This document shows positions 28,349-44,176 of a stretch of 64,000 nucleotides of DNA, one piece after another; position 1 is the first letter of the stretch; every line of letters begins with the position of its first letter. Below the pieces are notes generated by a model that saw only the letters and a program-made list of their open reading frames with translations, searched no databases and was not told where the DNA came from. Origin of the DNA: Obrimoposthia wandeli (Eukaryota); assembly GCA_977020255.1 (NCBI GenBank), contig CDROCS010001089.1, positions 124,001 to 188,000 of the forward strand, read 5' to 3'. The translations under genes were made by a program, and so were the position numbers.

Positions 28349-29152
28349 TCAACTCGCTCCGGCTCCTTTTCGGGACTCTTCATTACTTTCAACCAGCACA
28401 CCTTCACCTATTTGATTAATAGAAGCCCATAGCGGTTCAGATATCTCAATACCGTACTCAACGCTATTTAGCTTGTTAGCCGCAATTTGTGCACTGCTGA
28501 TATACTTGGCCTTACCTTGCCCTACGCCATCTTCTAGTGATGATTGGTCTTTCAGTGAAGAAGATAAATCCACTCGGGTACTACAAATGATGGTTAGACT
28601 TTGTTGCTGATCTGCTGCAGGTGGCACATCGCGATTATTGCCTACGCTCCCTTCAGCGCTATCCTCAACGCTCGCTTCATGATAACTAGGGTATTTATGG
28701 CCTGATTTAATAGCCGCAGTATGCTCAGTAATGACTTTGGATCCATTTCGCCAATAGGCAACAATACTGACGCCTCTGCGGCCACAATCGGTTAATGCTT
28801 TTAAAACAAACATGCGATTATGACAATTACGGATGGTCACGGTGGCTATACCGTTTTGCACTGATTTCAAGTAAGCCACATCTAGTGCAGCCGCAATACT
28901 ATTTAGTGAGCTGCGATTATGGCTATCTACCACAATGGCTGAGCTATCTTCATAAACAATGGTACTCGGTTGTTTATCTTGATCTAAGCCAATATAGGGC
29001 AGACAGCTATTAAACTCAGCCAATCCATTTAAACCATGCTTTTCTAACCACAAAATCATTTCAGCGGCATCTTCGTAATGGCCAACAAAATATCCTGTGG
29101 CTTCAAAACAACGGCGCAATGCAGCTTTTAGCTCTATCATTGATACATGCAC
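28349..29152 (-). CDS. DUF3726-like protein (resembles the Ldh_2 malate/L-sulfolactate dehydrogenase fold)
   Basis: N-terminus IELKAALRRCFEATGYFVGHYEDAAEMILWLEKHG and an Ldh_2-like tail NSVEYGIEISEPLWASI ending ESRKGAGA. Confidence 0.6.
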   Translation of the reverse strand: MHVSMIELKAALRRCFEATGYFVGHYEDAAEMILWLEKHGLNGLAEFNSCLPYIGLDQDKQPSTIVYEDSSAIVVDSHNRSSLNSIAAALDVAYLKSVQNGIATVTIRNCHNRMFVLKALTDCGRRGVSIVAYWRNGSKVITEHTAAIKSGHKYPSYHEASVEDSAEGSVGNNRDVPPAADQQQSLTIICSTRVDLSSSLKDQSSLEDGVGQGKAKYISSAQIAANKLNSVEYGIEISEPLWASINQIGEGVLVESNEESRKGAGAS

Positions 29153-29154
29153 AA

Positions 29155-30978
29155 TTACAGCTCCTTCTTTACGGACGTTGGTATTTCTAGATTAGGCGCT
29201 AGCGGTAGGAACCAATCATCGCTAAAAGGTTGGCCGATTTCTTCTAGTAAAGGCGCACCTTGAAACATCGTATTCCTCACCCAAAGTTTAGATTTCGGGT
29301 CAAATTTACCAACTCCGAAAAAGGCTAATTTACAGCGTAGCAAGTGCATCGGCAGTACATCTTTATCCAACAAATTGACTTGAATATCGCCGTATAAACC
29401 GTTATTCATACTTTGGATACGCCTAACTATGCCACGTAAATGTGGATGTGCTTGTACAAAGTGAGCACAGCGCGGGTTTTCATTGGAGTCTTCGCGATAT
29501 GCTTTTAGTAAGTCATAACATTTACGCACTTCATAGGCGATACCCAGTGGCATTTGTCGCTCAGCACCCGGCTCTTGGTTCGTTTTACCTAAACGCGGTT
29601 CCATTTTTTCTTCTGATCTATACCAAAAATTAGCCAAACTATCAGGTTGGCTGAAGTCGTATTTCAACGCCCAATCATAGCGCTCTTCTATCACTTGCTG
29701 TAATTGCATTAGCGACATTAGCGGCTCAATATCTAAGATGTCGTCAACGACTAAAAAATCCTCAAGATCCTCAACATGCTCTGGATATAGCTCTAATAAG
29801 ATAGACACCAACATTTCTTGACCTTGCAAAGAGCAATGCTCTTCAGTCCAACTGATCACCTCATCCCAATGGGTAAATCCTTTATCAACAAAAGCACTCA
29901 ACAGCTGAAAATCTAACAGCATTTTTTGGTTATTGTCAGTTTGCTGCTTATCTTCGGTAACAGTTTGTTCGGTATACTCGATGGCGCGTTTAATCAGCAA
30001 CTGCATTTTTTGCTTAATTGTAGTGCTTTGCCCGCCTAACACTCGAATTCTCGCTAGGGCTAATTCGCGCATTTCTACCCAGCGATTAATCAGTAACGGG
30101 TGATTTATCAAATACGGAGCCATGCCTAAACCAGTTGAATTACCAATGCCGATAAAGCGTTTAATTTCTACGTGCATTGGCTGGTAGCTGCCAGGCGCTT
30201 TATTTTTCGCTATATGCTCAACTTGTAATAAACTAAAATTGCGCAGCATTAAACACACAAACATTTCGGCAGAAAATGGGCGGTTAAAATCAGCGAAATG
30301 CGTGCTCACTTTTTCCCAATCAGCCATACCTAATTTACCACTGCCATAAACGGCTGTGGTTCGGTACAAATAACCCACTTGCGCTATCTTATCAATAGAT
30401 GGCTGCTCTCCACTGGCTAATACATCCACCATATAGTCAAAATTACGCGCACTGCGATTCGCCCTCGATAGAACAAAGACTCTAGAGTCAACTCTGCCCG
30501 CTTCTTGTTTGGGTACATTATTGCGCAGCTGTGTTAAATATTGTTCATCAATTTCACCATCCACCAGCGCCATAGTTAAATCCCATTGGCTGGCAATCAC
30601 TCGATCGTTTCGATCCTCAGGGGCTAGATAATTGGAAAATACTACAAAGTTGTATACGCGATTGGCCGTATTAATCTTATAAATAACCGTGCCATAACCA
30701 TCAACGTCCAAATCTAACTGATCAATACTTATTTGCCAGCGTTCACGCATAATGCGGCGCACTAATGTGCGCATAAAGCTCAACCTGCTTTGATGCATAG
30801 CGCCTAATCGCTCAATATCCATCACTTGGTGTGTTGAGCGTAAAGGCAGCGCTGTATCGCCACGAAGTTCGCTTGATATTGCAGCTGGGAGTGTCATTTC
30901 ATTATTTTTTGGCATTGCACAGCTCATTATTATTTTAGCCTGAGGCCTTTGCACAACGATCACATGCACAAGACACAA
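29155..30978 (-). CDS. Conserved hypothetical protein of about 600 aa, co-transcribed with DUF3726
   Basis: Long intact ORF ending 2 bp before the DUF3726 start. Segments LGAMHQSRLSFMR, VLSRANRS, YLYRTTAVYGSGKLG and KFDPKSKLWVRNTMFQGAP are ones I recognise from marine-bacterial hypotheticals. The start codon is uncertain. Confidence 0.75.
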   Translation of the reverse strand: MCLVHVIVVQRPQAKIIMSCAMPKNNEMTLPAAISSELRGDTALPLRSTHQVMDIERLGAMHQSRLSFMRTLVRRIMRERWQISIDQLDLDVDGYGTVIYKINTANRVYNFVVFSNYLAPEDRNDRVIASQWDLTMALVDGEIDEQYLTQLRNNVPKQEAGRVDSRVFVLSRANRSARNFDYMVDVLASGEQPSIDKIAQVGYLYRTTAVYGSGKLGMADWEKVSTHFADFNRPFSAEMFVCLMLRNFSLLQVEHIAKNKAPGSYQPMHVEIKRFIGIGNSTGLGMAPYLINHPLLINRWVEMRELALARIRVLGGQSTTIKQKMQLLIKRAIEYTEQTVTEDKQQTDNNQKMLLDFQLLSAFVDKGFTHWDEVISWTEEHCSLQGQEMLVSILLELYPEHVEDLEDFLVVDDILDIEPLMSLMQLQQVIEERYDWALKYDFSQPDSLANFWYRSEEKMEPRLGKTNQEPGAERQMPLGIAYEVRKCYDLLKAYREDSNENPRCAHFVQAHPHLRGIVRRIQSMNNGLYGDIQVNLLDKDVLPMHLLRCKLAFFGVGKFDPKSKLWVRNTMFQGAPLLEEIGQPFSDDWFLPLAPNLEIPTSVKKEL

Positions 30979-31094
30979 CCTATTTTGATCAGATTAATTT
31001 TAGTTAAGCGCATTAGCTCAGCTAAACCCATATTATTTATATGGAGATTATCAATAAAATAATTGTACTGCACAAACCAAAAAGCTCTATCAAT

Positions 31095-31113
31095 TGATAA
31101 GAAAAACTAATCA
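31095..31113. promoter_or_regulatory. LysR-type operator candidate TGATAAG-N5-CTAATCA
   Basis: One mismatch to the perfect palindrome at 39334-39352; upstream of the 607-aa/DUF3726 operon. Confidence 0.65.
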
Positions 31114-31241
31114 AGACTGTATTTTTATTAATAATTCCTATTAAACTTTTAAGCTATTTTTTGCCTTATGCGTCTTATAGTACATATAATTACCCTTAAA
31201 CCCTCAATTGAACTGCCAGCTATTTCAGCCATATTAAATTC

Positions 31242-33389
31242 TTGTTCGTCATACTTTTCACATACACCCGCAATTGCAGTATATTAGGCACATTTTCATT
31301 GGTTATGCCTGTAATGATTATAAAGCGGCGCTATATTATCAGCATTTTTTTGTTTACCAGCTTAAGCTTAAGCTGGCTTAGCTATTTTTACGTGCGCGAC
31401 TGGGAGCTTACCAATACTCAGCAATACAATAGCTCACAACTTCTAAACACTATCTCTGCGGTACGCTCAGCCCTAAATAAATTCCACGCACTGCCTTATA
31501 TTGTCTCTCAGCAATTAGATGTTCAAGCATTGCTGGATGACTCTAACTTAAAAAACCTGTTTCGAGTGCGCCGTTACTTAGAGCAAACAAATTTAATTGT
31601 CGGCTCTGCCGCTTTGTTAGTCTTAGATCGTAAAGGAGATGTTGCCGCTTATAGTAATTGGCGCGCACAGCCTAACTCGGTAAATACCAACTATCACCAG
31701 AGTGTTTTTTTTCAACAAGCCATCAAAGGCGAACAAGGCAGTGGCGTATGGTTTGATGAGCACCGCGCGGCTTGGTTTTATTTTTCTGCGCCTGTTTACC
31801 ACTTACAGCGTTTAATTGGTGTCGCGGTAATTCGTATCGATATCGCGAAGACGCTAGAAGAGCTAACCACACGAGAAGCCTTTTATCTAAGTGATCGCCA
31901 AAACGCCTTGATCTATGCAACCAAAGCGTTGGGTATACCTCCTAGTGATCAACTCATTAATGGTACTTTCGATACTTTCAATACCTTCAATACTTCCATT
32001 ACAGAAACCTTACTCGATGGTACTACTATTAATGTGCTGAGAAAAAACACCACTGACTATTTAGTTCAACAAGTATTGTTAGATGATACCCAGTGGAATA
32101 TTGGTGTGCTGACACCGCTGAATGTCAAATCCAAACCCTTTTGGGGCAGCGCAGCTGTGTTTTCTAGTACCCTTATCTTAGCTTTAATGCTGATGTATTT
32201 GCGAGAATGGCGCGCTAAAAAATTGTCACAACAACAAGTGATAGCGGCTCAGTTAGAGAGTGAAGCGCGTGCTCGCCATATCATCAATACTGCTCAATCA
32301 GGTTTGATTACCTTAGATAAGCACGCAAATATAACCTTTATCAACCCATTAGTGATGCAGCAGTTTGGCATTTCATTGAGTAATGTTGCCAATCAGCCGC
32401 TGGGAATACTATTCGATAATTTGTTGAATTTTGTCTCCCTAGACAGAGCACTAGAGAACTTAAAAAAAGGCACTTTCAGCCCACTAACCGGTTATGAAGT
32501 GGTTGCTAAGCGTTCTGATGGTTCTCTTTTCCCTGTCATGTTTAGCATCAAACTAATGCGCAGTACCCCCGTTATTGAATATCTGGTGACCTTGGTTGAC
32601 ATCACTAAACGTAAACAGCTGGAGCGCAGCCTTAAAGAAGCGAATGAATCCTTGGAAGACAAGGTCAGCAGGCGTACCAGAGCCCTAGAAAGCGCGCAGT
32701 CTGAGCTACTTAAAGTTGAAAAAATGGCGGTATTAGGGCGTATGTCTACGGCCATTGTTCACGAAATTAACCAACCGCTTACGGCACTGCGCAACTATTT
32801 GGCGATTTTAGCGCGCGTTAAAGACAACCCAGATTTAATCGACCAGCAACTTGATTCGCTTAATCATTTAGTCGACAACATGGTGGTGATTACTCGCCAG
32901 TTAAAAACATTCTCCTACGCTAAACCTAATAGAGGCCAAGCTGTTGATCTTGTTAGCGTCACTCGCGATGTATTCGCGCTATTAGCCCCTGAATTCGCAC
33001 AGCAGCAAATTCACTGTGAATTCAACACCCAAAGTGACAGTGTGATAGTACTGGCTGACCGAACAGGGCTAGAGCAAGTGCTGTTTAACTTACTGCGTAA
33101 CGCAATGGATGCTATGGCACAAACCCATACTAAAGAAATAAAATTGCAGTATTGTATTGTCGAACATAGAATCGTTTGTCAGCTCAGTGATACTGGTGGA
33201 GGAGTTGACGAGCAGCAGTTAAGCCAAATATTCGAGCCGTTTTTTACCACTAAAGAGATTGGTATGGGCCTCGGTTTAGGACTATCGATTATCAAAAATA
33301 TTCTCGATGATTTCCAGGGTGATATCAGTGCTAAAAATACCTCGACAGGCTTAGCCTTTACCTTTAGCTTACCTTTGCTATTAGATTAA
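31242..33389 (+). CDS. DctB-like PAS sensor histidine kinase (likely start 31305 or 31314)
   Basis: Periplasmic Cache-like region, PAS domain (AKRSDGSLFPV), H-box IVHEINQPL, N-box NLLRNAMDA and G-boxes DTGGG and GMGLGLGL. Confidence 0.88.
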   Translation: MFVILFTYTRNCSILGTFSLVMPVMIIKRRYIISIFLFTSLSLSWLSYFYVRDWELTNTQQYNSSQLLNTISAVRSALNKFHALPYIVSQQLDVQALLDDSNLKNLFRVRRYLEQTNLIVGSAALLVLDRKGDVAAYSNWRAQPNSVNTNYHQSVFFQQAIKGEQGSGVWFDEHRAAWFYFSAPVYHLQRLIGVAVIRIDIAKTLEELTTREAFYLSDRQNALIYATKALGIPPSDQLINGTFDTFNTFNTSITETLLDGTTINVLRKNTTDYLVQQVLLDDTQWNIGVLTPLNVKSKPFWGSAAVFSSTLILALMLMYLREWRAKKLSQQQVIAAQLESEARARHIINTAQSGLITLDKHANITFINPLVMQQFGISLSNVANQPLGILFDNLLNFVSLDRALENLKKGTFSPLTGYEVVAKRSDGSLFPVMFSIKLMRSTPVIEYLVTLVDITKRKQLERSLKEANESLEDKVSRRTRALESAQSELLKVEKMAVLGRMSTAIVHEINQPLTALRNYLAILARVKDNPDLIDQQLDSLNHLVDNMVVITRQLKTFSYAKPNRGQAVDLVSVTRDVFALLAPEFAQQQIHCEFNTQSDSVIVLADRTGLEQVLFNLLRNAMDAMAQTHTKEIKLQYCIVEHRIVCQLSDTGGGVDEQQLSQIFEPFFTTKEIGMGLGLGLSIIKNILDDFQGDISAKNTSTGLAFTFSLPLLLD

Positions 33390-33443
33390 GTGGCCAAATA
33401 GAATTACTAAACGAAGAGTCTGCATACATAGAGAAGAGTACTA

Positions 33444-34835
33444 GTGAATAAATTACAAGTTATCTTGGTTGACGATGAGCGCTCAGTGCGCGAATCAACT
33501 GCGCAGTGGCTTACTATCTGCGGTTTTGAAGTGCGCAGTTTTAGCGATCCACGACAGGTGCTAGCAGTCTTAGACGCTGCCTTTTTTGGCGCGGTGGTCA
33601 GCGATGTATTGATGCCTCAGCTCAGTGGTCTTGAACTTATGCAGCAGATACATCAGCGTTTCCCCAATGTACCTGTCATCCTCCTCACGGGGCACGGTGA
33701 TGTCGATATGGCGACCCAAGCCATGAAGCTAGGTGCTTACGACTTTATGGAAAAGCCTTATTTACCGGAACGCTTAAGTGAAAGAGTGCACCGCGCTTGC
33801 GATAAACATTTACTGTTACAAGAAAACAATAAACTACAAAACCACTTGGCATCGTTACAGGGAATAGAAGCCACTTTAATTGGCATTTCTGCGCCGATGC
33901 AGCACTTACGTAAGCAAGTAATGCGCTTAGCAGCACTGGATACCAGCGTGGTTATTTACGGAGAAACTGGCACTGGCAAAGAACTAGTCGCACAGTGTTT
34001 ACACGATTTTAGCTCACGCCAGAAAAAAAACTTTGTGCCCATAAATTGTAGCGCCATTCCTGAGTCACTGATTGAAAGTGAATTATTCGGCCATGAAGCA
34101 GGTGCTTTCACTGGCGCTAAATCTCGGCGCATCGGTAAATTTGAACATGCAGATGGTGGCACTTTACTATTAGATGAAATTGAAACAATGCCCGCTTTCG
34201 TGCAAGTTAAGATTTTGCGCGCATTACAAGATGGTTTGATTGAGCGCTTAGGCTCTAATAAGCAACAAAAGGTAAGACTACGAGTGGTGGCAGCCTCAAA
34301 AGAAGCACTGCGTGATCACAGCAGTTTTCGCCAAGATTTATATTATCGTCTCAATGTTTCTGAATTACATCTTCCACCTTTGCGTCAAAGAGTTGAAGAT
34401 GCTCCTCTTTTGTTTGATCACTATTTACGTATCGCCGCCAGCGATAATAACTTAACGCCCAGGGCATTGCGCGCAGGCGATATCAGTGCGCTGTTGCAAT
34501 ATGATTGGCCCGGGAATGTGCGTGAATTGAAAAACGTGGCGGTACGCTTCGCCTTAGACCATGAGCAAAATATTGCCGATATGTTACAACACCAGACCGC
34601 CCCAATGACAGGGCAAGAAAATGATAGTTGTCCAACCGATAGCAACGCTTTTGAGCATAACCAGCCACTGGCCGAGCAAGTAGCGAGCTTTGAATCCCAA
34701 CTACTTAAGAACGCACTAGCAAGGCACAGCGGCAGCATTAAACAAGTGATGTTAGAGCTAGATTTACCGCGGCGTACCATTAATCAAAAAATGATTCGCT
34801 ACGGTATTAATCGTGCAGATTTTCTCGACAGTTAA
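33444..34835 (+). CDS. DctD-like sigma54-dependent response regulator
   Basis: Receiver domain (VSDVLMP, LTGHG, EKP), GETGTGKE, GAFTGA, WPGNVRELKN and a Fis HTH. Confidence 0.9.
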   Translation: MNKLQVILVDDERSVRESTAQWLTICGFEVRSFSDPRQVLAVLDAAFFGAVVSDVLMPQLSGLELMQQIHQRFPNVPVILLTGHGDVDMATQAMKLGAYDFMEKPYLPERLSERVHRACDKHLLLQENNKLQNHLASLQGIEATLIGISAPMQHLRKQVMRLAALDTSVVIYGETGTGKELVAQCLHDFSSRQKKNFVPINCSAIPESLIESELFGHEAGAFTGAKSRRIGKFEHADGGTLLLDEIETMPAFVQVKILRALQDGLIERLGSNKQQKVRLRVVAASKEALRDHSSFRQDLYYRLNVSELHLPPLRQRVEDAPLLFDHYLRIAASDNNLTPRALRAGDISALLQYDWPGNVRELKNVAVRFALDHEQNIADMLQHQTAPMTGQENDSCPTDSNAFEHNQPLAEQVASFESQLLKNALARHSGSIKQVMLELDLPRRTINQKMIRYGINRADFLDS

Positions 34836-34871
34836 CGCTTGTTATTAATAGTAAGATGACCATTTATCGAA

Positions 34872-34920
34872 TAAGCAATAAATGGCTCATTGTTTTCTCT
34901 AATAGGCATAATATGGCTTA
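34872..34920. promoter_or_regulatory. Candidate enhancer pair (UAS) for the sigma54 activator
   Basis: Two similar imperfect palindromes, TAAGCAATAAATGGCTCA and TAGGCATAATATGGCTTA, 31 bp apart and about 65-110 bp upstream of the sigma54 box. Confidence 0.45.
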
Positions 34921-34982
34921 CTAATTCGCCTTTAATCCTCATTTTTTATTTTTTCATGTTATTTATTAAAGTGTTACAGTTT

Positions 34983-34999
34983 TTGGCATTCATCCTGCT
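34983..34999 (+). promoter_or_regulatory. sigma54 promoter of the TAXI-TRAP operon
   Basis: TTGGCATTCATCCTGCT, with GG at 34985-34986 and GC at 34997-34998. Confidence 0.65.
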
Positions 35000-35043
35000 A
35001 TCAGTACAAACAGTAAATATAATAATCAAAAAAGGAAAATTAC

Positions 35044-36136: not shown

Positions 36137-36147
36137 CAAGACCTGTA

Positions 36148-38322
36148 TTGGCGGTATCTGCTAGATACAAACAAGGTATTTCTATGTCTACTCAAACGAG
36201 ATCATCCTCCCAAGCACTAGATTCAGAACTTGATACCGCGCTCAAAGAGATGCAGCTAACCCAGCGTGGTGACCAGAGCGTCGCCGGTAAGCTTGTGTAT
36301 TGGCTTGGTGTTATGTTCGCACTCACACATATTTACTTCAACACTTTAGGCACATGGTCAGAGCTTTATGTTTCGGCTATTCACTTTGGCGGTTTTGCCC
36401 TTATCTGTGCATTGATGTACCCAGCGGCTAAGGGAAAACTTGCCCAAAGTAAAATTCTACTGTTACTCGATATCGTATTAGGCATAACAGCGATCGTTTG
36501 CGCTTGGTATTTGATTAGCGCAGAAGATGCACTCTATGCACGCGGTGTAAAATTCAACAACAGTGACTGGGTCTTCTCTTTTTTAGCCATCATTATCGTG
36601 CTTGAATTAGTTAGGCGCACCACAGGCTGGTTTATTCCCTGCATGATAGTAACCGCACTCACTTATGTATTTTGGTGGGGCCCTTATGTCGATGGTATGT
36701 TTGGCTTTGCAGGTCTCAGCTTAGAAACAGTGATGTTCCGCTCTTATTTCTCTGGTGAAGGGATGTTTGGGGCGATTGCGCGTATTTCGTGGACTTTTGT
36801 GTTCATGTTTATCTTGTTTGGTGCCTTTTTGGTTAAATCAGGTGCGGGCGAATTTATTATCGAATTATCACGCTGCGCTGCAGGGCGCTTTGTAGGTGGT
36901 CCGGGCTTTGTCGCTGTCATAGGTTCTGGTCTAATGGGCTCTGTTTCAGGCTCTTCTGTAGCCAATACGGTTTCAACTGGCGTGATCACCATACCTTTAA
37001 TGCGCAAGGCTGGATTCCCCGCAAAATTTGCCGCCGCTGTTGAAGCCGCAGCTTCCACTGGAGGCCAGCTTATGCCACCCGTGATGGGAGCCGGTGCATT
37101 TATCATGGCTTCATATACGCAGATTTCTTACGTGCAAATTATTTCCATTGCCGCACTGCCTGCGCTACTTTATTTCTTGTCTGTTGGTTTTTATGTGCGC
37201 GTTGAAGCACAGCGTAGCCACGCTCACGCAGTGGAAGTTGACGCACGCCCAATAGGCCGAGTATTCAAAGAAGGCTGGCATTTTATATTGCCGCTAGCGG
37301 TACTGGTTAGCTTGCTGATTTACGGCTTTACGCCCACTTATGCCGCCGGTATTGCCATTATTGCAGTGATCATCTCTTCTTGGTTATCTAAAACGCCTAT
37401 GGGGATTACAGAGATTTTAGATGCTCTAGCGCAGGGCAGCAAAAATATGGCTAGTACTGCTATTTTGCTGATCGCTATTGGGTTAGTGGTCAACGTGGTT
37501 GCCATGACAGGCATTGGCAACACCTTCTCTTTGATGGTGACTGATTGGGCCGCCGGTAGTTTATTAATTACCTTAGTGCTAATTGCATTCGCTTCATTAA
37601 TACTGGGAATGGGCTTGCCGGTTACCGCAGCTTATATCGTATTAGCCACACTTTCGGCCCCTGCACTGTACAATTTAATTGCCGAGATGAAGTTACTCGA
37701 TTTAATGGTCGACGGTGGATTACCCGAAGCTGCGCGCACTATTTTTCTCTTGATAGACCCTTCGAAAATACCGCTTTTGAGCGCGCCAATGTCATTAATT
37801 GATGCGCAAGCGTTACTTGATTTAGTGCCTGCGGACTTTAAAGGCCAGCTTTTAGAGCAATCGCTTGATCCACAAGTGCTGACGATGGTACTGCTATCGG
37901 CTCACATGATCATATTTTGGTTGTCACAAGATTCTAATGTCACACCACCTGTGTGTTTAACAGCCTTTGCCGCCGCCGCGATTGCTAAAACACCCCCTAT
38001 GGCAACCGGGCTTAGCGCTTGGAAAGTTGCTAAGGGCTTGTATATCGTGCCGTTGATTTTCGCCTACACCAACTTCATTGGCGGCACCACAATAGAAGTA
38101 CTCTCAGTCTTTTTCTTCTCGATGTTTGGGCTATATGCTTTTGTCGGATTGATGGAAGGCTATTTGGAGGGGCCGCTTAATTTATTACTGCGCCTCGCGT
38201 CAGGTTTGTTGATGTTAGGCTTGTTATGGCCACATCCAATGTTGTGGCTCAAGTTATTGTGCGTAGTACTGTTTATTGGGTTATTCATGCACAGTAAGCG
38301 CAAGCACAGTGAATCCGTTTAA
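36148..38322 (+). CDS. TRAP fused DctQM permease (4TM/12TM; likely start ATG 36184)
   Basis: GSVSGSSVANTVSTG, AASTGGQLMPPVMGAGAF, LGMGLPVTAAY and SNVTPPV. Confidence 0.92.
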   Translation: MAVSARYKQGISMSTQTRSSSQALDSELDTALKEMQLTQRGDQSVAGKLVYWLGVMFALTHIYFNTLGTWSELYVSAIHFGGFALICALMYPAAKGKLAQSKILLLLDIVLGITAIVCAWYLISAEDALYARGVKFNNSDWVFSFLAIIIVLELVRRTTGWFIPCMIVTALTYVFWWGPYVDGMFGFAGLSLETVMFRSYFSGEGMFGAIARISWTFVFMFILFGAFLVKSGAGEFIIELSRCAAGRFVGGPGFVAVIGSGLMGSVSGSSVANTVSTGVITIPLMRKAGFPAKFAAAVEAAASTGGQLMPPVMGAGAFIMASYTQISYVQIISIAALPALLYFLSVGFYVRVEAQRSHAHAVEVDARPIGRVFKEGWHFILPLAVLVSLLIYGFTPTYAAGIAIIAVIISSWLSKTPMGITEILDALAQGSKNMASTAILLIAIGLVVNVVAMTGIGNTFSLMVTDWAAGSLLITLVLIAFASLILGMGLPVTAAYIVLATLSAPALYNLIAEMKLLDLMVDGGLPEAARTIFLLIDPSKIPLLSAPMSLIDAQALLDLVPADFKGQLLEQSLDPQVLTMVLLSAHMIIFWLSQDSNVTPPVCLTAFAAAAIAKTPPMATGLSAWKVAKGLYIVPLIFAYTNFIGGTTIEVLSVFFFSMFGLYAFVGLMEGYLEGPLNLLLRLASGLLMLGLLWPHPMLWLKLLCVVLFIGLFMHSKRKHSESV

Positions 38323-38416
38323 CCCGTGGCCTAGACTTTCAAAGTGAAAAAGGCAGAGCAATTGCAGTCAATCGCTGCTTTTTCTCTGCTAACAGCTAAC
38401 TATCAATTACTAGCAT

Positions 38417-39334
38417 CTAACCACTGACAGGAAGGTTATCCATCTCTTCTTTTTGATTGATAATGAAATCTACCATGGCTTGAGCAGGTGGTGATAATGC
38501 TTTATTTTTCAGCATCACTATGCCAATTTTTCGCTTTACTGTTGGTTCAGCCAAAGAAATAAAAGCAAGTTTAGGATTATCTTTAGGGAAGGCATACCAA
38601 GGTAAAGTGGTTATGCCAAACCCTGCTTCAAGCATTGCTATTAATGAAATCATATTCGATACATAAAACTGTGATTTTTCAATTACCGCTTTCGCTTCAA
38701 TGCTCTTCAGTAACCGTGAAGTGCCATTGGCAATTAAACGATGCTGGCTAAGCTTTTCCCAATCTAAGTTAGTAAATTGCGTCAATGGATGATCAACAGG
38801 ACACACCACTCCAATCTGATCCTCCCAGATGGGAATAAACACTTTATCGCTATGTTCATTCTCATCAAACAGATGGGAAATACCAAAATCCACTTGCTGG
38901 TTCTCGATCATTCTCATCACTGCATCTGAATTATCATCATAAAGGCTAATCTTTAATTCAGGAGAGCCCTTGATAAATTTCTGTAATAACCCCGGCAAAA
39001 TTCTACTGGCAATCGACGGCACTGATGCAAAACGTAAATGTCCTGCTTTGTATTGAGAAAGCAGCATCATATCTTGCGCAATGCGATCGTGATGCGCAAT
39101 AAATTCTTTTGCCTTGGGCATAAAGTATAAGCCGAACGGGGTTAGCTCTGTTTTTGAGCTCTTCGCTTCACGTTTTTCAAATAAAGATTGCCCTAACTTA
39201 TTTTCCAAATCACGAATAGACAGTGATATAGCAGGCTGGGTACGGTGTGCTTTGTGAGCGGCCAAATGAAACCCTTTAAGCTCTGCGACCCATACAAAGT
39301 GGCGAAGTTGTGCAATTTTAAACTCAGGCAACAT
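38417..39334 (-). CDS. LysR-family regulator of the catabolic locus
   Basis: HTH GFHLAAHKAHRTQPAISLSIRDLE; divergent from the aldehyde dehydrogenase gene. Confidence 0.9.
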   Translation of the reverse strand: MLPEFKIAQLRHFVWVAELKGFHLAAHKAHRTQPAISLSIRDLENKLGQSLFEKREAKSSKTELTPFGLYFMPKAKEFIAHHDRIAQDMMLLSQYKAGHLRFASVPSIASRILPGLLQKFIKGSPELKISLYDDNSDAVMRMIENQQVDFGISHLFDENEHSDKVFIPIWEDQIGVVCPVDHPLTQFTNLDWEKLSQHRLIANGTSRLLKSIEAKAVIEKSQFYVSNMISLIAMLEAGFGITTLPWYAFPKDNPKLAFISLAEPTVKRKIGIVMLKNKALSPPAQAMVDFIINQKEEMDNLPVSG

Positions 39335-39352
39335 GATAAGTTTCCCTTATCA
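39334..39352. promoter_or_regulatory. LysR operator TGATAAG-N5-CTTATCA
   Basis: Perfect 7-bp inverted repeat containing the T-N11-A box, overlapping the LysR start codon in the divergent promoter. Confidence 0.7.
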
Positions 39353-39426
39353 AAAGATATTATTAATTAATTTTTATTATTTAACCATATTACTTATCAT
39401 AGGTTCAATTAATTCTGGAGATCATC

Positions 39427-40869
39427 ATGACTAATTCCGTATATAAAAACTACATTGCTGGTGAGTGGGTCACTACAACTAATACTATTGATAACATAAG
39501 CCCTGCTGACAGCACGGATCTAATTGGTGTTTATGCCCAGGCGGATGCTGCACAAACAATTGCAGCGATTGACGCAGCGAAACAAGGCCAACTAGCGTGG
39601 CAAGAAAGCGGCCTAGAGCAGCGCTATTCCGTGCTAATGGCTATTGGTGATGAACTACTTGAGCGCAGTGCTGAGCTTGGTAAGTTGCTGGCCAGAGAAG
39701 AAGGTAAAACACTGGCTGAAGGTAAAGGTGAAGTTTACCGTTCAGGTCAGTTCTTTCATTACTACGCGGCTGAAGTGCTGCGCCAAATGGGTGAAACAGC
39801 CGCCTCTGTACGCCCTGGTGTTTCAATTGAAACTTACCGTGAGCCGGTAGGTGTTGTCGCAATTATCACTCCTTGGAATTTTCCTACTGCTACCGGTGCT
39901 TGGAAAATTGCACCAGCACTCGCGTTTGGTAATGCAGTGGTCTTTAAACCTGCTAACCAAGTGCCGGCGAGTGCTTGGGCATTAACTGAAATTATTTCTC
40001 GTCAAAACCTACCCGCTGGTACTTTTAACTTAGTGATGGGGCCTGGCTCTGAAGTTGGCGAAACGATTATTAATTCTAGAAAAATTAATGCATTAAGCTT
40101 TACAGGATCATTAGAAACAGGTCGTAAAGTTGCAATTGCTACTGCGACTAACTTAGTTAAATGCCAGCTAGAAATGGGCAGCAAGAACGCACTTATCGTA
40201 CTTGATGATGCCGATTTAGATACGGCTGTTGAATGCGCAGTCAGTGGTGCTTTCTTTGGTACTGGTCAAAAATGTACTGCCTCATCACGCTTAATCGTTA
40301 CTGCGGGTATTCATGACACGTTCGTGGCAGCTGTGATTGAAAGAATGAAGAAGCTTGTGGTCGGTCACCCTCTTAAAGAAGGTGTTCACATTGGCGCGGT
40401 TGCCGATGCACGCCAAATGCAGCAGAACCTAGACTATTTAGCGATTGCTAAAAAAGAAGGTGCGACACTGGCTTACGGTGGCGAAATCATCAAAGAAGAA
40501 ACCGATGGTCATTTCTTACAACCTGCACTATTCATTGATACCACTAATGATATGACCATCAACCGCGATGAAGCTTTTGCGCCTATCGCTTGTGTGATTA
40601 AGGTTGCAGATTACGATGAAGCCTTAGCGACACTTAATGATACTAACTACGGCCTAACCGGCGGCATCATTACGCAGTCACTTAAATACGCTAACCACTT
40701 TAAGCGCAATGCTGAGACTGGCTGTGTGATGATTAACTTACCCACTGCTGGCACTGATTATCACGTACCTTTTGGTGGTCGTAAAGAGTCAAGCTTTGGC
40801 CCGAGAGAGCAAGGTTCCTACGCTAAAGAGTTCTACACGATTGTTAAAACTTCTTATATGAAATCATAA
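39427..40869 (+). CDS. NAD(P)-dependent aldehyde dehydrogenase (alpha-ketoglutaric semialdehyde dehydrogenase-like)
   Basis: TPWNFP, FTGSLETG, LEMGSKN, catalytic GQKCTAS and EAFAP. Confidence 0.9.
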   Translation: MTNSVYKNYIAGEWVTTTNTIDNISPADSTDLIGVYAQADAAQTIAAIDAAKQGQLAWQESGLEQRYSVLMAIGDELLERSAELGKLLAREEGKTLAEGKGEVYRSGQFFHYYAAEVLRQMGETAASVRPGVSIETYREPVGVVAIITPWNFPTATGAWKIAPALAFGNAVVFKPANQVPASAWALTEIISRQNLPAGTFNLVMGPGSEVGETIINSRKINALSFTGSLETGRKVAIATATNLVKCQLEMGSKNALIVLDDADLDTAVECAVSGAFFGTGQKCTASSRLIVTAGIHDTFVAAVIERMKKLVVGHPLKEGVHIGAVADARQMQQNLDYLAIAKKEGATLAYGGEIIKEETDGHFLQPALFIDTTNDMTINRDEAFAPIACVIKVADYDEALATLNDTNYGLTGGIITQSLKYANHFKRNAETGCVMINLPTAGTDYHVPFGGRKESSFGPREQGSYAKEFYTIVKTSYMKS

Positions 40870-40873
40870 GGAG

Positions 40874-41866
40874 TTGAATATGCACGATGAACTAATCGTC
40901 ATTGATGGATTGCAGTATTCCAACTGGAACCGCGAAATATTTGAACAGCTAAAAATAGGCGGCGTGACCATGGTACACGCCACTATTGTCTATCATGAAC
41001 AGATACGCGAAACATTACTACGCATCAGTGAATGGAACGTATTGTTCGAGCAAAATCATGACTTAATTATGCCCGTTAAATCCGCGGCTGATATACGCCT
41101 TGCCAAGCAACTGGGTAAAGTCGGTATTATGTTCGGTGCGCAAAATTGCTCACCGATCGAAGATGATATCGGCATGATTGAGGTCATGCGTGAGCTTAAC
41201 CTGATGATTATGCAGCTAACTTATAACAACCAAAGCTTACTTGCTTGTGGTTGTTATGAAGCGCATGACAGCGGCGTAACGCGCTTTGGTAGGCAAGCGA
41301 TACTTGAGATGAACCGTGTGGGTATGATTATCGATATGAGCCACTCAGGTGAACAAAGTACCTTAGATGCGATTGAAATATCACAGCGTCCGATTGTTAT
41401 TTCCCATGCTAATCCAAATGCATTTCATCTCGCCAAACGCAATAAATCCAGTAAAGTACTCAGCGCTTTAGCTGAATCTAAAGGTTTACTAGGTTTTAGT
41501 TTATATCCTTTTCATTTGAAAAACGGCCCTGACTGCACCTTGCCAGAGTTTTGTGAAATGATCGCGCAAACTGCAGATTTAATGGGTGTTGATCGCTTAG
41601 GTATAGGCACTGACCTATGCCAAAACCAGCCACTTTCCATTCTTGAATGGATGCGTAACGGCCGCTGGTCAAAGCAAATGGATTATGGAGAAGGTAATAA
41701 GAGCAACGCAGATTGGCCACGTCCGTTATCTTGGTTTAAAGATAGCAGAGACTTTCCAAATCTAACCCAAGGGTTAAAAGATCAAGGCTTTAATAACACT
41801 GAGATCGCTAAAATAATGGGCCAAAATTGGCTAAACTTTTTCGAACACAGCTTAACGCCTGGCTAA
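40874..41866 (+). CDS. Membrane/renal dipeptidase (M19) fold protein with atypical metal ligands (likely start ATG 40880)
   Basis: LTYNNQ, GVTRFGR..EMNRVG..DMSH, ISHAN and GIGTD are present. The usual DGHND motif reads DGLQY. Confidence 0.8.
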   Translation: MNMHDELIVIDGLQYSNWNREIFEQLKIGGVTMVHATIVYHEQIRETLLRISEWNVLFEQNHDLIMPVKSAADIRLAKQLGKVGIMFGAQNCSPIEDDIGMIEVMRELNLMIMQLTYNNQSLLACGCYEAHDSGVTRFGRQAILEMNRVGMIIDMSHSGEQSTLDAIEISQRPIVISHANPNAFHLAKRNKSSKVLSALAESKGLLGFSLYPFHLKNGPDCTLPEFCEMIAQTADLMGVDRLGIGTDLCQNQPLSILEWMRNGRWSKQMDYGEGNKSNADWPRPLSWFKDSRDFPNLTQGLKDQGFNNTEIAKIMGQNWLNFFEHSLTPG

Positions 41867-41952
41867 GTTTGTAAAATACAATATGCATGTCGTTTCTGAT
41901 CAGGTTATAAACAACGAATTAGGTTATAAATTTAACCTGGGATAACAAAAGA

Positions 41953-42154
41953 GGCGACTTTATTCTAGCTATTCCACCACAGGTAATGTGGCGGCAGTAA
42001 TAGAGCTGATCATGCAAAAAAGTTATTTACTAAACTGGAATCTATGGAGGGAATTCGTTTACCCGGTAGCAGATGTCACAACTTGCGTCAGGATTTAGGC
42101 CCAAGAGCTGTGAACAGTGCTTTGATTGAAAAATTAACTGGTATGTCTGAATGA
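41953..42154 (+). pseudogene. 3' remnant of an Ldh_2-family (DpkA/ComC-like) oxidoreductase
   Basis: Manual translation: GDFILAIPP [frameshift] SNRADHAKKLFTKLESMEGIRLPGSRCHNLRQDLGPRAVNSALIEKLTGMSE*. There is no start and the 5' part is missing. Confidence 0.6.
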
Positions 42155-42334
42155 TTAGCCCTCATCAAGGCACTACCCCTAATATGACACAACAACTTTA
42201 ACTAGAGACTTAACGCAAGTAATCATTGTAATTGACCTTTTAGCAACATAAACACAGTAACGTAACTATAGCTACTGTTTCACTAAGAGTTAATTACGAT
42301 TTAAAGTCATTATAAAAATAAATAGAGGTACACC

Positions 42335-44176
42335 ATGGCACAATCACAAACACCGCCACCGTTTACAGATATCGATGTAAAAACCGAAGAAAGTGGTTTT
42401 TACAAGGGGTATAGTTTACCTATTGCGATGATCAGTAAAAGTGCGATTGCATTGCTCGTCTTATGGGCGCTGGTTTTTCCTGATGATGCAGGAACAGCCC
42501 TTTCAACCTTAAATGGCACCATCCTTAATACCTTCAACGCTTTTTATATTCTTGCAGTTGGCTTTTTTGCATTCTTTTGCTTTGCCGTCGCAATCGTTCC
42601 TAGTTGGGGCAAGCGTATCTTAGGCAAACCAGGTCAAAAACCGGAGTTTTCAAACTTCTCTTGGTTTTCGATGATGTTTGGTGCGGGTTTAGGTGTAGGC
42701 CTGATGGTTTACTCTACCGCTGAACCTATTGGTTTGTGGGGATCTAACCCTGATATATTAGCAGGTCTTGCACAGGGAAATACAGCCGCCGCAGTTGAAT
42801 CTGGTATGCGTTATACCTTCTTACACTACGGTTTTCATGCATGGGCTATCTATGTAGTAACTGGCTTAACATTAGCTTATTACGCTTACACTCGCGATAT
42901 GCCACTGACTATTCGCTCTGCGTTAACGCCTTTACTAGGTAAGCTAATGAATGGCCCTCTTGGGCACTTAGTCGATATCTTAGGGGTATTAGCCACGATA
43001 TTGGGAGTATCCGTAACGATCGGTTTTGGTATCAGCCAAATGGTTGATGGTATTTACGCGATTACCGGTATTGAATGGATAATGAAAGACATCGCCACAA
43101 AACCGACCCCGAGTACAGTTGGCTTAATTGCTGCTCTTGTTACTATCATGAGTATGTCTATTATTTCTGCTGTTTCTGGTGTTGGCCGTGGTGTTAAATA
43201 CCTGTCGAACATAAACTTAGTACTGTCGTTAATTTTACTATTAACCTTTATTATTTTTGGCTCATTCAGTTTTGCTTTGACCACTTATGGCACGGCTCTA
43301 GTTGATTATCTAATGAACTTCGTATCGATGTCTTTTACACCGCATTTTCCAATGGGTTATGAAAGCTTTGTAGCGGCTTTACCAGAAGCTGCACGCACAT
43401 TGCCTGAAGCAGATATTCAAGCGCTGCACAGCACTGGACCTTGGGGTGGCTTTGAAGGCTTTAAATCGGGCTTGCCCGCTGCATTACAAAGCACTGCTGA
43501 TTTTGATGCGACCGCGACTAGCCTCTGGCAGTTAACAGAAGCGGGTAGACAGTTCTCATGGCAGTCAGCATGGACAACTTTCTACTGGGCTTGGTGGATC
43601 GCGTTCTCTCCTTTCGTTGGTTTATTCTTAGCACGTATCTCTAAAGGACGTTCAATTCGTGAATTTGTACTAGGCGCAGTTATTGCTCCTGCTTTAGTGT
43701 GTTTCGCTTGGATGACAATTCTGGGTGGTACCGCAATGGATATGGAACTTTCTGGCGCCGCTGAAGGTGCAATTATCGGAGCATCCGCTTCTGCTAAATT
43801 GTTTACGACTTTAGGTTTAATTATCGACGGTGGGTTTTTACAAGCTATCACTATCATGTCGGTGGTACTCGTTATTACTTTCTTAGTAACCTCTGCTGAC
43901 TCAGGCATCTTAGTGATGAACACTATTATGTCAGGTGGTGCTGAGGAAACCGGCAATTTACACCGTGTAATCTGGGGAATTTTACTGACGTTAGTCATAG
44001 GCACATTATTAATTGCTGGCGGCGGCGGAATGGGCGCCCTGAAAAACGCGATGATTATAGCGGCGCTTCCTTTCGCAGTGATCATGTGCTTAATGTGTGT
44101 GGCACTATTAAAAGCATTAGTCAGAGATTCAATGCGCGAATCGGCAACATCATCTGAAGCAGCTGTACAGCAATAA
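42335..44176 (+). CDS. BCCT-family transporter
   Basis: SWFSMMFGAGLGVG, HYGFHAWAIY, WTTFYWAWWIAFSPFVGLFLARISKGR and FLVTSADSG. Confidence 0.95.
   Translation: MAQSQTPPPFTDIDVKTEESGFYKGYSLPIAMISKSAIALLVLWALVFPDDAGTALSTLNGTILNTFNAFYILAVGFFAFFCFAVAIVPSWGKRILGKPGQKPEFSNFSWFSMMFGAGLGVGLMVYSTAEPIGLWGSNPDILAGLAQGNTAAAVESGMRYTFLHYGFHAWAIYVVTGLTLAYYAYTRDMPLTIRSALTPLLGKLMNGPLGHLVDILGVLATILGVSVTIGFGISQMVDGIYAITGIEWIMKDIATKPTPSTVGLIAALVTIMSMSIISAVSGVGRGVKYLSNINLVLSLILLLTFIIFGSFSFALTTYGTALVDYLMNFVSMSFTPHFPMGYESFVAALPEAARTLPEADIQALHSTGPWGGFEGFKSGLPAALQSTADFDATATSLWQLTEAGRQFSWQSAWTTFYWAWWIAFSPFVGLFLARISKGRSIREFVLGAVIAPALVCFAWMTILGGTAMDMELSGAAEGAIIGASASAKLFTTLGLIIDGGFLQAITIMSVVLVITFLVTSADSGILVMNTIMSGGAEETGNLHRVIWGILLTLVIGTLLIAGGGGMGALKNAMIIAALPFAVIMCLMCVALLKALVRDSMRESATSSEAAVQQ

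What the first reader, a model, noticed from the sequence alone, without database searches (positions are those of the whole stretch)
28349..44176. Split, re-wired N-methylated-heterocycle (homarine-like) catabolic locus tied together by a duplicated LysR operator
Seen: LysR is divergent from ALDH-dipeptidase-(Ldh_2 remnant)-BCCT. The 607-aa hypothetical and DUF3726 lie 8 kb away on the other strand. Both units carry TGATAAG-N5-CT(T/A)ATCA (39334 and 31095), and in the direction of transcription each copy is followed 3 nt later by GATA, like a LysR RBS/ABS pair. From memory and unverified: this same family set occurs as one operon in Roseobacter-group bacteria and was linked to homarine (N-methylpicolinate) degradation to N-methylglutamate (hom genes). 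Inference: here the operon was broken, the two orphaned genes kept or gained their own operator, and the pathway may still be co-regulated.
Basis: partly seen in the sequence, partly recalled or inferred. Interest (0 to 1): 0.75.

Follow-up and report, generated by a model that had tools for sequence, protein, structure and literature searches.

The report
Split homarine locus with HomR boxes
This is a marine bacterium's copy of the homarine-degrading hom genes published in 2026, cut into two distant units by an unrelated transporter module but probably still switched on together, because both units carry the same conserved regulator-binding site.

Summary

**What the locus is.** It is the homarine (hom) catabolic gene set of an Oceanospirillaceae bacterium. 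The pathway was published in March 2026 (PMC13236597).
- homR (LysR) is divergent from homD (ALDH), homC (M19), an Ldh_2 remnant and a BCCT transporter.
- homB (about 580 aa) and homA (DUF3726) lie 7.4 kb behind homR.

**The palindrome.** It is real and is the best candidate for the HomR box.
- ATAAG-N5-CTTAT sits in the homR|homD gap in 66 of 69 related species, and upstream of homB in 69 of 69.
- In the window and the three relatives I counted, a -10 hexamer follows 41-42 nt after the box. This puts the box centre near -64, the classic LysR position.
- So two units with two boxes are ancestral to a large gammaproteobacterial clade. They were not created here.

**What is specific to this lineage** (shared with one MAG at 93% HomB identity):
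- A four-gene module that sits elsewhere in relatives (sensor kinase, sigma-54 regulator, TAXI-TRAP transporter) was dropped about 35 bp upstream of the homB box.
- A DpkA-like Ldh_2 gene, intact in the next relative, has decayed.

The six hom genes I could compare remain under purifying selection (dN/dS 0.03-0.07; homC was not measurable).

This scan had already met hom operons on other contigs of the same composite assembly (s1-204563, s1-241127).

The parts
28349..29152 (-). homA candidate (DUF3726 protein, 267 aa)
   Evidence: Pfam PF12525 E 1.7e-20, with a weak Ldh_2-like N-terminus. It directly follows homB in the loci mapped. dN/dS against the nearest MAG is 0.066.
29155..30978 (-). homB candidate. 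The ORF is 607 aa; the probable true start is the ATG at 30897, giving 580 aa.
   Evidence: No Pfam, NCBIfam or PDB sequence hit. It is 63-93% identical to 80 public loci and 37.5% over 95% of its length to the Phaeobacter hom-type gene. The start was inferred from alignment A1. dN/dS is 0.057.
31047..31052 (-). Predicted -10 hexamer (GATAAT) of the homB promoter
   Evidence: It lies 42 nt after the box, the same spacing as at the homD promoter and in two of three relatives read (my reading of the sequences). This is an inference; the sigma-70 scan does not list it, which is expected for an activator-dependent promoter.
31088..31113 (-). HomR box 2 (TGATTAG-N5-CTTATCA, then N3-GATA), upstream of homB
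   Evidence: The equivalent box is found upstream of homB in 69/69 related loci.
31145..31145 (.). Approximate insertion breakpoint on the homB side
   Evidence: Homology to the uninterrupted homR-homB spacer of L025 starts here, about 35 bp upstream of the box (79.5% over 122 nt).
31242..33389 (+). PAS sensor histidine kinase (inserted module)
   Evidence: Pfam HisKA, HATPase_c and PAS. An orthologue lies at a different locus in relatives (52-60% identity).
33444..34835 (+). Sigma-54-dependent response regulator (inserted module)
   Evidence: Pfam Response_reg, Sigma54_activat and HTH_8. NtrC/AtoC-like, below the equivalog cut-offs.
34982..34997 (+). Sigma-54 promoter-like element (TGGCAT-N5-CTGCT; GG-N10-GC) upstream of the TAXI gene
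   Evidence: Read directly from the sequence. This is an inference.
35044..36069 (+). TAXI-family TRAP solute-binding protein (inserted module)
   Evidence: TIGR02122 at 316.6 bits against a cut-off of 84. The closest PDB chain is 9ibp (E 1.2e-148), which I infer to be V. cholerae VCA0144, a protein whose ligand is unknown.
36148..38322 (+). Fused TRAP permease (inserted module)
   Evidence: TIGR02123 at 647 bits against a cut-off of 321.
38357..38378 (.). Bidirectional terminator-like hairpin between the convergent TRAP permease and homR
   Evidence: One search lists it on both strands.
38417..39334 (-). homR (LysR-type regulator)
   Evidence: Pfam HTH_1 and LysR_substrate. It is divergent from homD in all 80 related loci. 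dN/dS is 0.046.
39334..39359 (+). HomR box 1 (TGATAAG-N5-CTTATCA, then N3-GATA) in the homR|homD gap. It abuts the homR start codon.
   Evidence: Conserved in 66/69 related loci. A strongly conserved AT-rich block follows it.
39395..39400 (+). Predicted -10 hexamer (TATCAT) of the homD promoter
   Evidence: It lies 42 nt after the box. TATGAT or TATAAT stands at the same place in relatives. This is an inference.
39427..40869 (+). homD (aldehyde dehydrogenase)
   Evidence: Pfam Aldedh E 5e-152. It is 81-98% identical across the clade. The paper's homD is an aldehyde dehydrogenase that is essential for growth on homarine.
40874..41866 (+). homC (M19 membrane-dipeptidase family)
   Evidence: Pfam Peptidase_M19 E 6.6e-75. 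The paper predicts a peptidase for HomC.
41953..42151 (+). Remnant (last 66 codons, with one frameshift) of a DpkA-like Ldh_2 gene
   Evidence: tblastn against the intact L025 gene. The same remnant is present in the nearest MAG. The intact gene's closest PDB relative is delta1-piperideine-2-carboxylate reductase 1wtj (E 3.3e-73).
42335..44176 (+). BCCT transporter (homT-like position)
   Evidence: Pfam BCCT E 3.7e-147, in two stretches. It is 88% identical to the L025 gene at the same position, but only about 30% identical to the BCCT found in most other loci of the clade.

Best explanation
The stretch is a functional hom (homarine, N-methylpicolinate) catabolic regulon of an Oceanospirillaceae bacterium, organised as two transcription units that share one LysR-type activator, HomR.

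**Unit 1.** homD, homC and a BCCT transporter are read divergently from homR.

**Unit 2.** homB and homA are read in the same direction as homR, but from their own promoter.

**Control.** Each promoter has the same HomR recognition box (ATAAG-N5-CTTAT, a T-N11-A dyad) centred about 64 bp upstream of the predicted transcription start. Each box is followed by a promoter-specific conserved block that would serve as the activation site. The inducer (homarine or a ring-opened product) is expected to let HomR activate both promoters. Box 1 abuts the homR start codon, so HomR should also repress its own gene.

**History.**
- This two-promoter layout is ancestral to a large gammaproteobacterial clade.
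- In the lineage of the window, a self-contained module (sensor kinase, sigma-54 regulator, TAXI-TRAP transporter with its own sigma-54 promoter) moved from elsewhere in the genome into the homR-homB spacer.
- It landed about 35 bp upstream of box 2 and pushed the two units 7.4 kb apart without touching either promoter.
- On the same branch, a hom-linked DpkA-like Ldh_2 gene between homC and the transporter was deleted down to its last 66 codons.

**Shown and inferred.** Shown: gene identities, synteny, conservation of the boxes, the insertion history and purifying selection. Inferred: HomR binding, the promoter positions, the inducer and the substrate.
For: **Hom identity**
- The family set and order match the paper's description and the annotated Phaeobacter plasmid operon.
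- HomB is 37.5% identical over 95% of its length to the Phaeobacter protein.
- The paper reports Oceanospirillaceae homB transcripts enriched after homarine addition.

**Boxes**
- Window count against shuffles.
- 66/69 loci have the box in the homR|homD gap and 69/69 upstream of homB.
- Of 117 exact boxes in 1.39 Mb of related loci, 103 lie in these two promoter regions.
- There are only 1-4 sites per 5-6 Mb genome in the three nearest relatives, and two of them sit at hom in the two nearest.
- The same box is found at hom loci of other contigs with only 43% HomB identity and on a Pseudomonas plasmid.
- Downstream blocks and -10 hexamers are conserved.

**Insertion**
- The nearest MAG, L027, has the same layout. 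The next relative, L025, has the same flanks but no insert.
- The module sits elsewhere in three relatives, at 80-91% identity for the TAXI gene.
- The breakpoint was mapped.

**Selection**
- dN/dS is 0.02-0.07 for every gene compared, including homA and homB, against L027 (dS 0.33-1.1), so the split state has been maintained.

**Tree**
- The two-unit clade is monophyletic in the HomB tree (SH-aLRT 98, quick search).
Against: - No direct comparison with the experimentally validated proteins (SPO3188-3192, ACFLL8_11490-11520) could be made.
- There are no expression or binding data.
- The sigma-70 consensus scan does not list the proposed promoters.
- This subclade differs from most of the clade. 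It has a different BCCT (about 30% identity) and no linked RidA-family gene. A shifted substrate is therefore possible.
- The locus fails the paper's own 10-kb co-location filter: homA to homD is 10.3 kb and homA to homC is 11.7 kb.
- No SoxD/mgd-type gene appeared on this contig among the best hits. The nearest MAG, however, has three such hits.
Confidence: 0.72

Rival explanations
1. One reading: a single hom operon was broken in this genome, and the orphaned homB-homA pair then kept or acquired a copy of the operator.
For: Single-operon forms exist: the Phaeobacter plasmid, the Caballeronia plasmid and contigs C410, C4150 and C2834 of the same assembly. The two units are indeed far apart here.
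Against: All 69 complete loci of the window's HomB clade already have homR, homB and homA as a separate unit with its own box. The box, its flanks and the -10 region upstream of homB are homologous to those of the uninterrupted relative L025. The two-unit clade is monophyletic.
Confidence: 0.04
2. The locus is a hom paralogue that now acts on a different N-methylated heterocycle or betaine (for example trigonelline, N-methylproline-type compounds or picolinate), not on homarine.
For: This subclade swapped the usual BCCT for one only about 30% identical, lacks the linked RidA gene that 61 of 80 loci have, and once carried a DpkA-like reductase gene. HomB is only about 37-43% identical to the single-operon forms. 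A more distant paralogous cluster exists in S. meliloti pSymB. The window lies among other quaternary-amine clusters (earlier notes s1-247190 and s1-244709, not checked here).
Against: The core HomA, B, C, D and R set is complete and collinear with the clade. HomD and HomC are 80-90% identical across genera. The HomR box is unchanged. The paper found Oceanospirillaceae homB induced by homarine in seawater.
Confidence: 0.15
3. The palindrome is the site of another regulator, such as a Nac-like global LysR protein (the box also fits ATA-N9-TAT), or it is a non-regulatory conserved element.
For: The box fits the generic T-N11-A / ATA-N9-TAT pattern of many LysR proteins (established knowledge). 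No binding data exist.
Against: There are only 1-4 copies per genome, concentrated at hom. The box tracks homR across genera. Phaeobacter, with a divergent HomR, has a different sequence in the same gap. In Colwellia-like genomes, extra copies sit upstream of a porin gene next to the hom locus, as expected of a dedicated regulon.
Confidence: 0.06
4. After separation from homR, the homB-homA unit became silent and is decaying. The locus is then a relic, like the Ldh_2 remnant.
For: One accessory gene in the locus has already decayed. HomA and HomB are the least conserved hom proteins.
Against: Both ORFs are intact. dN/dS is 0.057 for homB and 0.066 for homA since the split from L027, which already carried the insertion. 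The promoter and box are 87% conserved with L027. Lower conservation of HomA and HomB is general across the clade.
Confidence: 0.03

Closest known systems
homABCDER homarine catabolic operon (Ferrer-Gonzalez et al., Nat Microbiol 2026, PMC13236597; Cobetia sp. OBi1 and Ruegeria pomeroyi DSS-3)
   Same: It has the same families. There is an adjacent pair of a long uncharacterised protein and a DUF3726 protein, an M19-type peptidase (homC), an aldehyde dehydrogenase (homD), a LysR regulator (homR) and a BCCT transporter in the homT position.
   Different: - It is not one operon. There are two units 7.4 kb apart, more than 10 kb from homA to homD and homC, so it fails the paper's co-location filter.
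- The transporter is of a different BCCT subfamility from most relatives.
- There is no linked RidA-family gene, and the Ldh_2 gene has decayed.
- The paper's main text describes no HomR operator and no promoter architecture.
Classical LysR-type activator architecture (recognition site with T-N11-A near -65, activation site near -35, divergent autoregulated regulator gene). This is established knowledge of the family.
   Same: The dyad contains T-N11-A and is centred about -64 from the predicted start at both promoters. It is followed by a conserved second block. The regulator gene is divergent, and its start abuts the box.
   Different: One regulator serves two promoters that are not divergent from each other, and in this genome they are separated by an unrelated four-gene module. 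Binding has not been tested.
Trigonelline (tgn) cluster of Acinetobacter, cited by the hom paper as an analogue (TgnA/TgnB)
   Same: It catabolises an isomeric N-methylpyridinium carboxylate. A two-protein ring-opening step is proposed, followed by hydrolase and aldehyde dehydrogenase steps.
   Different: No homology was shown here. HomB has no Pfam family, no PDB sequence hit and no convincing fold match, so a flavin oxygenase mechanism is unsupported by my data.
Vibrio cholerae TAXI-TRAP system VCA0144/VCA0146 (PMC12718363)
   Same: The inserted solute-binding protein matches PDB 9ibp at E 1.2e-148. I infer that this chain is VCA0144. Both systems have a fused permease.
   Different: The ligand of VCA0144 is unknown; neither glutamate nor glutamine binds. 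Here the transporter is preceded by a sensor kinase and sigma-54 regulator pair, and it sits inside a hom locus.

Membership tests
hom (homarine catabolism) gene cluster | Adjacent homA/homB pair (a DUF3726 protein plus a long uncharacterised partner) | tested here: met
   28349-29152 and 29155-30978 are adjacent on the minus strand. The same pair stands in the Phaeobacter operon and in the 80 related loci. Which gene the paper calls A and which B is inferred from its HMM E-values.
hom (homarine catabolism) gene cluster | homC (peptidase-type hydrolase) and homD (aldehyde dehydrogenase) present together with a regulator, homR | tested here: met
   M19 at 40874-41866, ALDH at 39427-40869 and LysR at 38417-39334.
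hom (homarine catabolism) gene cluster | homA, B, C and D co-located within 10,000 bp (the paper's survey criterion) | tested here: not met
   homA to homD is 10.3 kb and homA to the end of homC is 13.5 kb, because of the 7.1-kb inserted module. This is a search filter, not a biological requirement.
hom (homarine catabolism) gene cluster | Reciprocal best hits to SPO3188-SPO3192 or ACFLL8_11490-11520 | not testable with these tools
   Those sequences could not be reached. The paper's supplements are not held, and the best 80 genome loci were all closer relatives. The proxy was a Phaeobacter plasmid of the same family as Ruegeria.
hom (homarine catabolism) gene cluster | Growth on, or induction by, homarine, with N-methylglutamate as product | not testable with these tools
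hom (homarine catabolism) gene cluster | Auxiliary homE present | tested here: inconclusive
   The paper's main text does not name HomE's family. There are two candidates. A RidA-family gene is linked in 61 of 80 loci but absent from the window. An Ldh_2 gene follows homA in Phaeobacter and is present here only as a remnant.
LysR-type regulated promoter | T-N11-A dyad upstream of the target promoter, near -65, in the gap next to a divergent LysR gene | tested here: met
   The box at 39334-39352 contains T-N11-A, and a -10-like hexamer follows 42 nt after it. The geometry is the same at 31095-31113.
LysR-type regulated promoter | Binding of the cognate regulator and inducer-dependent activation | not testable with these tools
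   This needs EMSA, DAP-seq or reporter assays.
TAXI-TRAP transporter | TAXI solute-binding protein plus fused DctQM permease, both above the curated family cut-offs | tested here: met
   TIGR02122 scores 316.6 bits (cut-off 84.35) and TIGR02123 scores 647.4 bits (cut-off 320.65).

The most novel reading that the evidence does not exclude
The translocated sensor kinase, sigma-54 regulator and TAXI-TRAP module was not a neutral passenger. Its kinase gene now starts 128 bp from HomR box 2, back-to-back with the homB promoter, and it did not bring its former upstream region with it. HomR bound at box 2 could therefore also drive the module. That would couple uptake of a still unknown TAXI cargo (for example homarine itself, picolinate or N-methylglutamate) to homarine catabolism, in a lineage that had exchanged its BCCT and lost its RidA and Ldh_2 accessories. 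Separately, the conserved boxes define a HomR regulon that reaches beyond the published operon. In several Colwellia-like genomes it includes a porin gene.
Probability: 0.12. Interest if true: 0.6.

Novelty: new variant of a known kind. Interest (0 to 1): 0.35.

Why it matters
The pathway itself is already published, so the locus is not a discovery of new chemistry. Three things are added.

1. **A concrete, testable HomR operator.** It comes with a two-promoter architecture conserved in about 70 species. The hom paper's main text does not describe either. The operator gives a sequence tag for finding hom-regulated genes, such as the porin noted in passing.

2. **A warning for surveys.** hom loci can be split beyond 10 kb by insertions into the homR-homB spacer. 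At least five unrelated cargos were seen there. Window-based operon surveys will therefore miss such genomes.

3. **The accessory layer turns over quickly.** The core homABCD-R set stays under strong constraint, while the RidA-like gene, the DpkA-like Ldh_2 gene and the type of BCCT change. This bears on which steps of homarine breakdown are enzyme-dependent.

Tried and rejected
- **Pfam on the Ldh_2 remnant.** Scanning the translated pieces gave nothing. The remnant was only shown by comparison with the intact gene of L025.
- **Reaching the validated proteins.** The paper holds no supplements as text. Other papers only call SPO3188 'hypothetical'. The genome scan returned only closer relatives at 63-93%.
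- **'Own genome' searches.** G000 is a 1.35-Gb, 6912-contig composite, so genome-wide counts of the motif (13 sites against 54 for the reversed control) say nothing about one organism. I used the three nearest public genomes instead.
- **A glutamate reading for the TAXI protein.** I rejected it. The close PDB match, 9ibp, appears to be VCA0144, which binds neither glutamate nor glutamine. The glutamate binder GluP matches only at E about 1e-28.
- **Calling the Ldh_2 gene the paper's homE.** I assumed this at first from the Phaeobacter order. I withdrew it after finding the RidA gene in 61 of 80 loci, against Ldh_2 in 2 of 80.
- **HomB structure.** The model is confident (pLDDT 83, pTM 0.86), but Foldseek against the PDB gives nothing below E 0.05. 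The exhaustive aligner gives at best Z 5.5, with weak GNAT-like rows that are within noise. The protein-atlas search returned only 'hypothetical protein' clusters.
- **Sigma-70 scan.** It did not find the proposed activator-dependent promoters.
- **HomB tree.** The careful search did not finish in the time allowed. The quick tree is reported.
Full report
**What is in the sequence**

- On the minus strand lie a DUF3726 protein (28349-29152) and, directly upstream of it, a 607-codon ORF with no family hit (29155-30978).
- On the plus strand follow a PAS histidine kinase, a sigma-54 response regulator, a TAXI solute-binding protein and a fused TRAP permease (31242-38322).
- Then comes a LysR gene on the minus strand (38417-39334).
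- Divergent from it are an aldehyde dehydrogenase, an M19 dipeptidase-family protein and a BCCT transporter (39427-44176).

The 19-nt palindrome occurs exactly twice, at 31095 and 39334, and nowhere else in the window. None of 100 shuffles reached that count. Each copy is followed, in the direction of the downstream gene, by three bases and GATA.

**The pathway is already published**

A full-text search found Ferrer-Gonzalez et al., Nat Microbiol 2026 (PMC13236597).
- The paper defines homABCDER in Cobetia sp. OBi1 and Ruegeria pomeroyi.
- homD is an aldehyde dehydrogenase, HomC is a predicted peptidase, and HomA and HomB are a proposed heterodimer. homR is the regulator, homT is a betaine-type transporter, and homE is variably present.
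- N-methylglutamate and glutamate are the products.

I could not obtain the reference proteins themselves. As a named proxy I used the annotated plasmid pPGA2_239 of Phaeobacter inhibens, which belongs to the same family as Ruegeria.
- It carries LysR | ALDH, membrane dipeptidase, BCCT, hypothetical protein, DUF3726 and an Ldh-family gene, next to sarcosine-oxidase-type genes.
- Its hypothetical protein is 37.5% identical to the window's long ORF over 95% of its length.
- This order equals the Cobetia locus-tag order R, D, C, T, B, A, E read backwards.

The paper's homB HMM reaches E-values of 1e-240, while its homA HMM reaches only 1e-57. I therefore read the long protein as HomB and DUF3726 as HomA.

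**Who carries it**

The 'own genome' of the window is a 1.35-Gb, 6912-contig composite that holds at least ten hom loci from different bacteria.

The best public match is an Oceanospirillaceae MAG (L027, 93% HomB identity). Next come another Oceanospirillaceae MAG (L025, 75%), a Nitrincolaceae-labelled MAG, and Osedax symbiont Rs2 (72-73%).

**The two-unit layout is ancestral**

I mapped the hom genes in all 80 related loci.
- Every complete locus reads the same way. homT, homC and homD lie on one strand. On the other lie homR, homB and homA.
- A spacer of a few hundred bases separates homR from homB.
- This holds across Amphritea, Neptunomonas, Marinobacterium, Marinomonas, Colwellia, Pseudoalteromonas, Zobellella, Marinobacter and others, and also on a Pseudomonas plasmid.
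- In a HomB tree this clade is monophyletic (SH-aLRT 98, quick search). The single-operon forms fall outside it: Phaeobacter, a Caballeronia plasmid, and contigs C410, C4150 and C2834.

**The operator**

- The core ATAAG-N5-CTTAT, allowing at most 2 mismatches (most copies have none), is present in the homR|homD gap of 66 of 69 loci. The three misses have gaps hidden by over-called ORFs (gap lengths -30, -25 and 23 nt); an exact box turned up at two of them.
- It is present upstream of homB in 69 of 69 loci.
- Of 117 exact copies in 1.39 Mb of these loci, 103 lie in those two promoter regions.
- In the three nearest genomes (5-6 Mb each) the extended box occurs at only 1-4 sites. In the two nearest, two of those sites are at hom.
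- The same box also stands in the homR|homD gap of hom loci whose HomB is only 43% identical.
- Phaeobacter has a different sequence in that gap.

Anchored alignments show what follows each box.
- At the homD promoter there is a nearly invariant AT-rich block of about 28 nt.
- At the homB promoter there is a different conserved block (GATA.A, then a T-rich stretch ending TTTG).
- In the window and the three relatives I counted, a -10-like hexamer follows 41-42 nt after the box at both promoters. One of the three (C253) has only a weaker hexamer at the homB promoter.

This places the box centre about 64 bp upstream of the start. That is the textbook geometry of a LysR recognition site, with the activation site next to it (established knowledge of the family).

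In the window, box 1 abuts the homR start codon, which suits autorepression.

All of this is inference from sequence. No binding or expression data could be obtained.

**What is special here**

L027 has the same four-gene block between homR and homB. L025 shares both flanks with the window (response regulator, kinase, BCCT, homC and homD on one side; solute-binding protein and MFS on the other) but has homR and homB 353 bp apart.

The block is a conserved unit at other positions in three relatives. The TAXI gene is 80-91% identical, and the flanks there do not match the window. It was therefore translocated within the lineage, not acquired from outside.

Homology to the uninterrupted L025 spacer resumes about 35 bp upstream of box 2, near 31145. 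The homB promoter was left whole.

The block carries its own sigma-54-type promoter (GG-N10-GC, 34982-34997) in front of the TAXI gene. A hairpin separates its end from homR.

Its solute-binding protein is closest to PDB 9ibp, which I infer to be V. cholerae VCA0144. That protein's cargo is unknown, so I make no claim about what the module transports.

The spacer between homR and homB has been invaded independently elsewhere:
- a chemoreceptor in Colwellia psychrerythraea;
- a malic enzyme in another Colwellia;
- an aminotransferase;
- a LysR plus alcohol-dehydrogenase pair in Motiliproteus;
- 8.5 kb in one MAG.

In each case the box stays with homB.

**The Ldh_2 remnant**

Between homC and the BCCT, L025 has an intact 332-aa Ldh_2 gene. 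Its closest solved relative is delta1-piperideine-2-carboxylate reductase DpkA.

The window keeps only the last 66 codons, in two frames. The same remnant is present in L027's genome. The loss and the insertion therefore fall on the same branch.

Whether this gene is the paper's homE is open.
- Ldh_2 is linked to hom in only 2 of the 80 loci, plus Phaeobacter and contig C4528.
- A 123-aa RidA-family gene is linked in 61 of the 80, and in varying positions elsewhere. This fits the paper's statistics for homE better.
- The window's subclade lacks the linked RidA gene and uses a different BCCT.

**Is it still working?**

All ORFs are intact. Pairwise dN/dS against L027 is 0.057 for homB, 0.066 for homA, 0.025 for homD and 0.046 for homR. 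It is 0.02-0.07 for the inserted genes, at dS 0.33-1.1. homT against L025 gives 0.044; homC was not measurable because dS was saturated. Selection has therefore kept both units and the passenger module since the insertion.

**Verdict**

The evolutionary story needs correcting: two promoters with two boxes are the inherited state, and the window merely shows them pulled apart by a translocated module.

- The pathway is known.
- The operator and the dual-promoter architecture are, as far as the paper's main text goes, new and well supported by comparison.
- The split is a variant that operon-window surveys would miss.
- The substrate and the regulation remain untested.

The scan had already recognised hom operons on other contigs of this assembly.

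Noticed in passing
L011:1474-3882 (G000:C3501); also G000:C2751:462803-464662 and G000:C3535:41109-42971: In three low-GC (about 30%) contigs, HomB and the DUF3726 protein HomA are fused into one open frame of 810-825 aa. This natural fusion supports the HomA/HomB complex that the hom paper proposed from modelling.
   Followed up: partly
61 of loci L025-L104 (e.g. L032:3797-4162, L094:1452-1817); L013:8579-8932; L131:9472-9834: A highly conserved 123-aa RidA-family gene (72-81% identical across genera) is linked to most hom loci. It lies after homT in the two-unit clade, between homR and homD in C410 and C4150, and after homA in a Caballeronia plasmid. It may be the paper's homE. It is absent from the window's subclade.
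   Followed up: partly
L100:2518, L078:1879 and 1998, L072:1338, L091:1715 (box positions): In Psychrobium, Thalassotalea, Pseudoalteromonas and one uncultured gammaproteobacterial MAG, a further exact HomR-type box lies 140-270 bp upstream of a Porin_4 outer-membrane porin gene, a few kb from the hom genes. This suggests a homarine-inducible porin in the regulon.
   Followed up: partly
L094:7449-9155 and L095:6991-8697: Colwellia psychrerythraea has a methyl-accepting chemotaxis protein gene inserted between homR and homB. The hom paper reports that homarine induces chemotaxis genes, so this could be a homarine chemoreceptor.
   Followed up: no
window 29155-30897 (model mac000cea561e): A confident AlphaFold model of HomB (pLDDT 83, pTM 0.86) has no convincing structural neighbour in the PDB. 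Foldseek gives E above 0.05, and the exhaustive search gives at best Z 5.5 with weak GNAT-like rows. The fold and the chemistry of the key enzyme remain open.
   Followed up: partly
L130:6716-10390 (Sinorhizobium meliloti 1021 pSymB): A distant paralogous cluster holds a HomB-like protein (29% identity), a 251-aa ORF in the homA position and an M19 protein (40%). It has no aldehyde dehydrogenase. It may serve another N-heterocyclic substrate.
   Followed up: no
window 42335-44176: The BCCT protein matches its Pfam model in two stretches (residues 31-335 and 403-602), which implies an insertion of about 65 residues in mid-protein. It is 88% identical to the L025 gene but only about 30% identical to the BCCT of most hom loci.
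   Followed up: no
G000 as a whole: The assembly that the window belongs to has 1.35 Gb in 6912 contigs and contains many different bacterial genomes, with at least ten hom loci. 'Own genome' counts are therefore not counts for one organism.
   Followed up: yes
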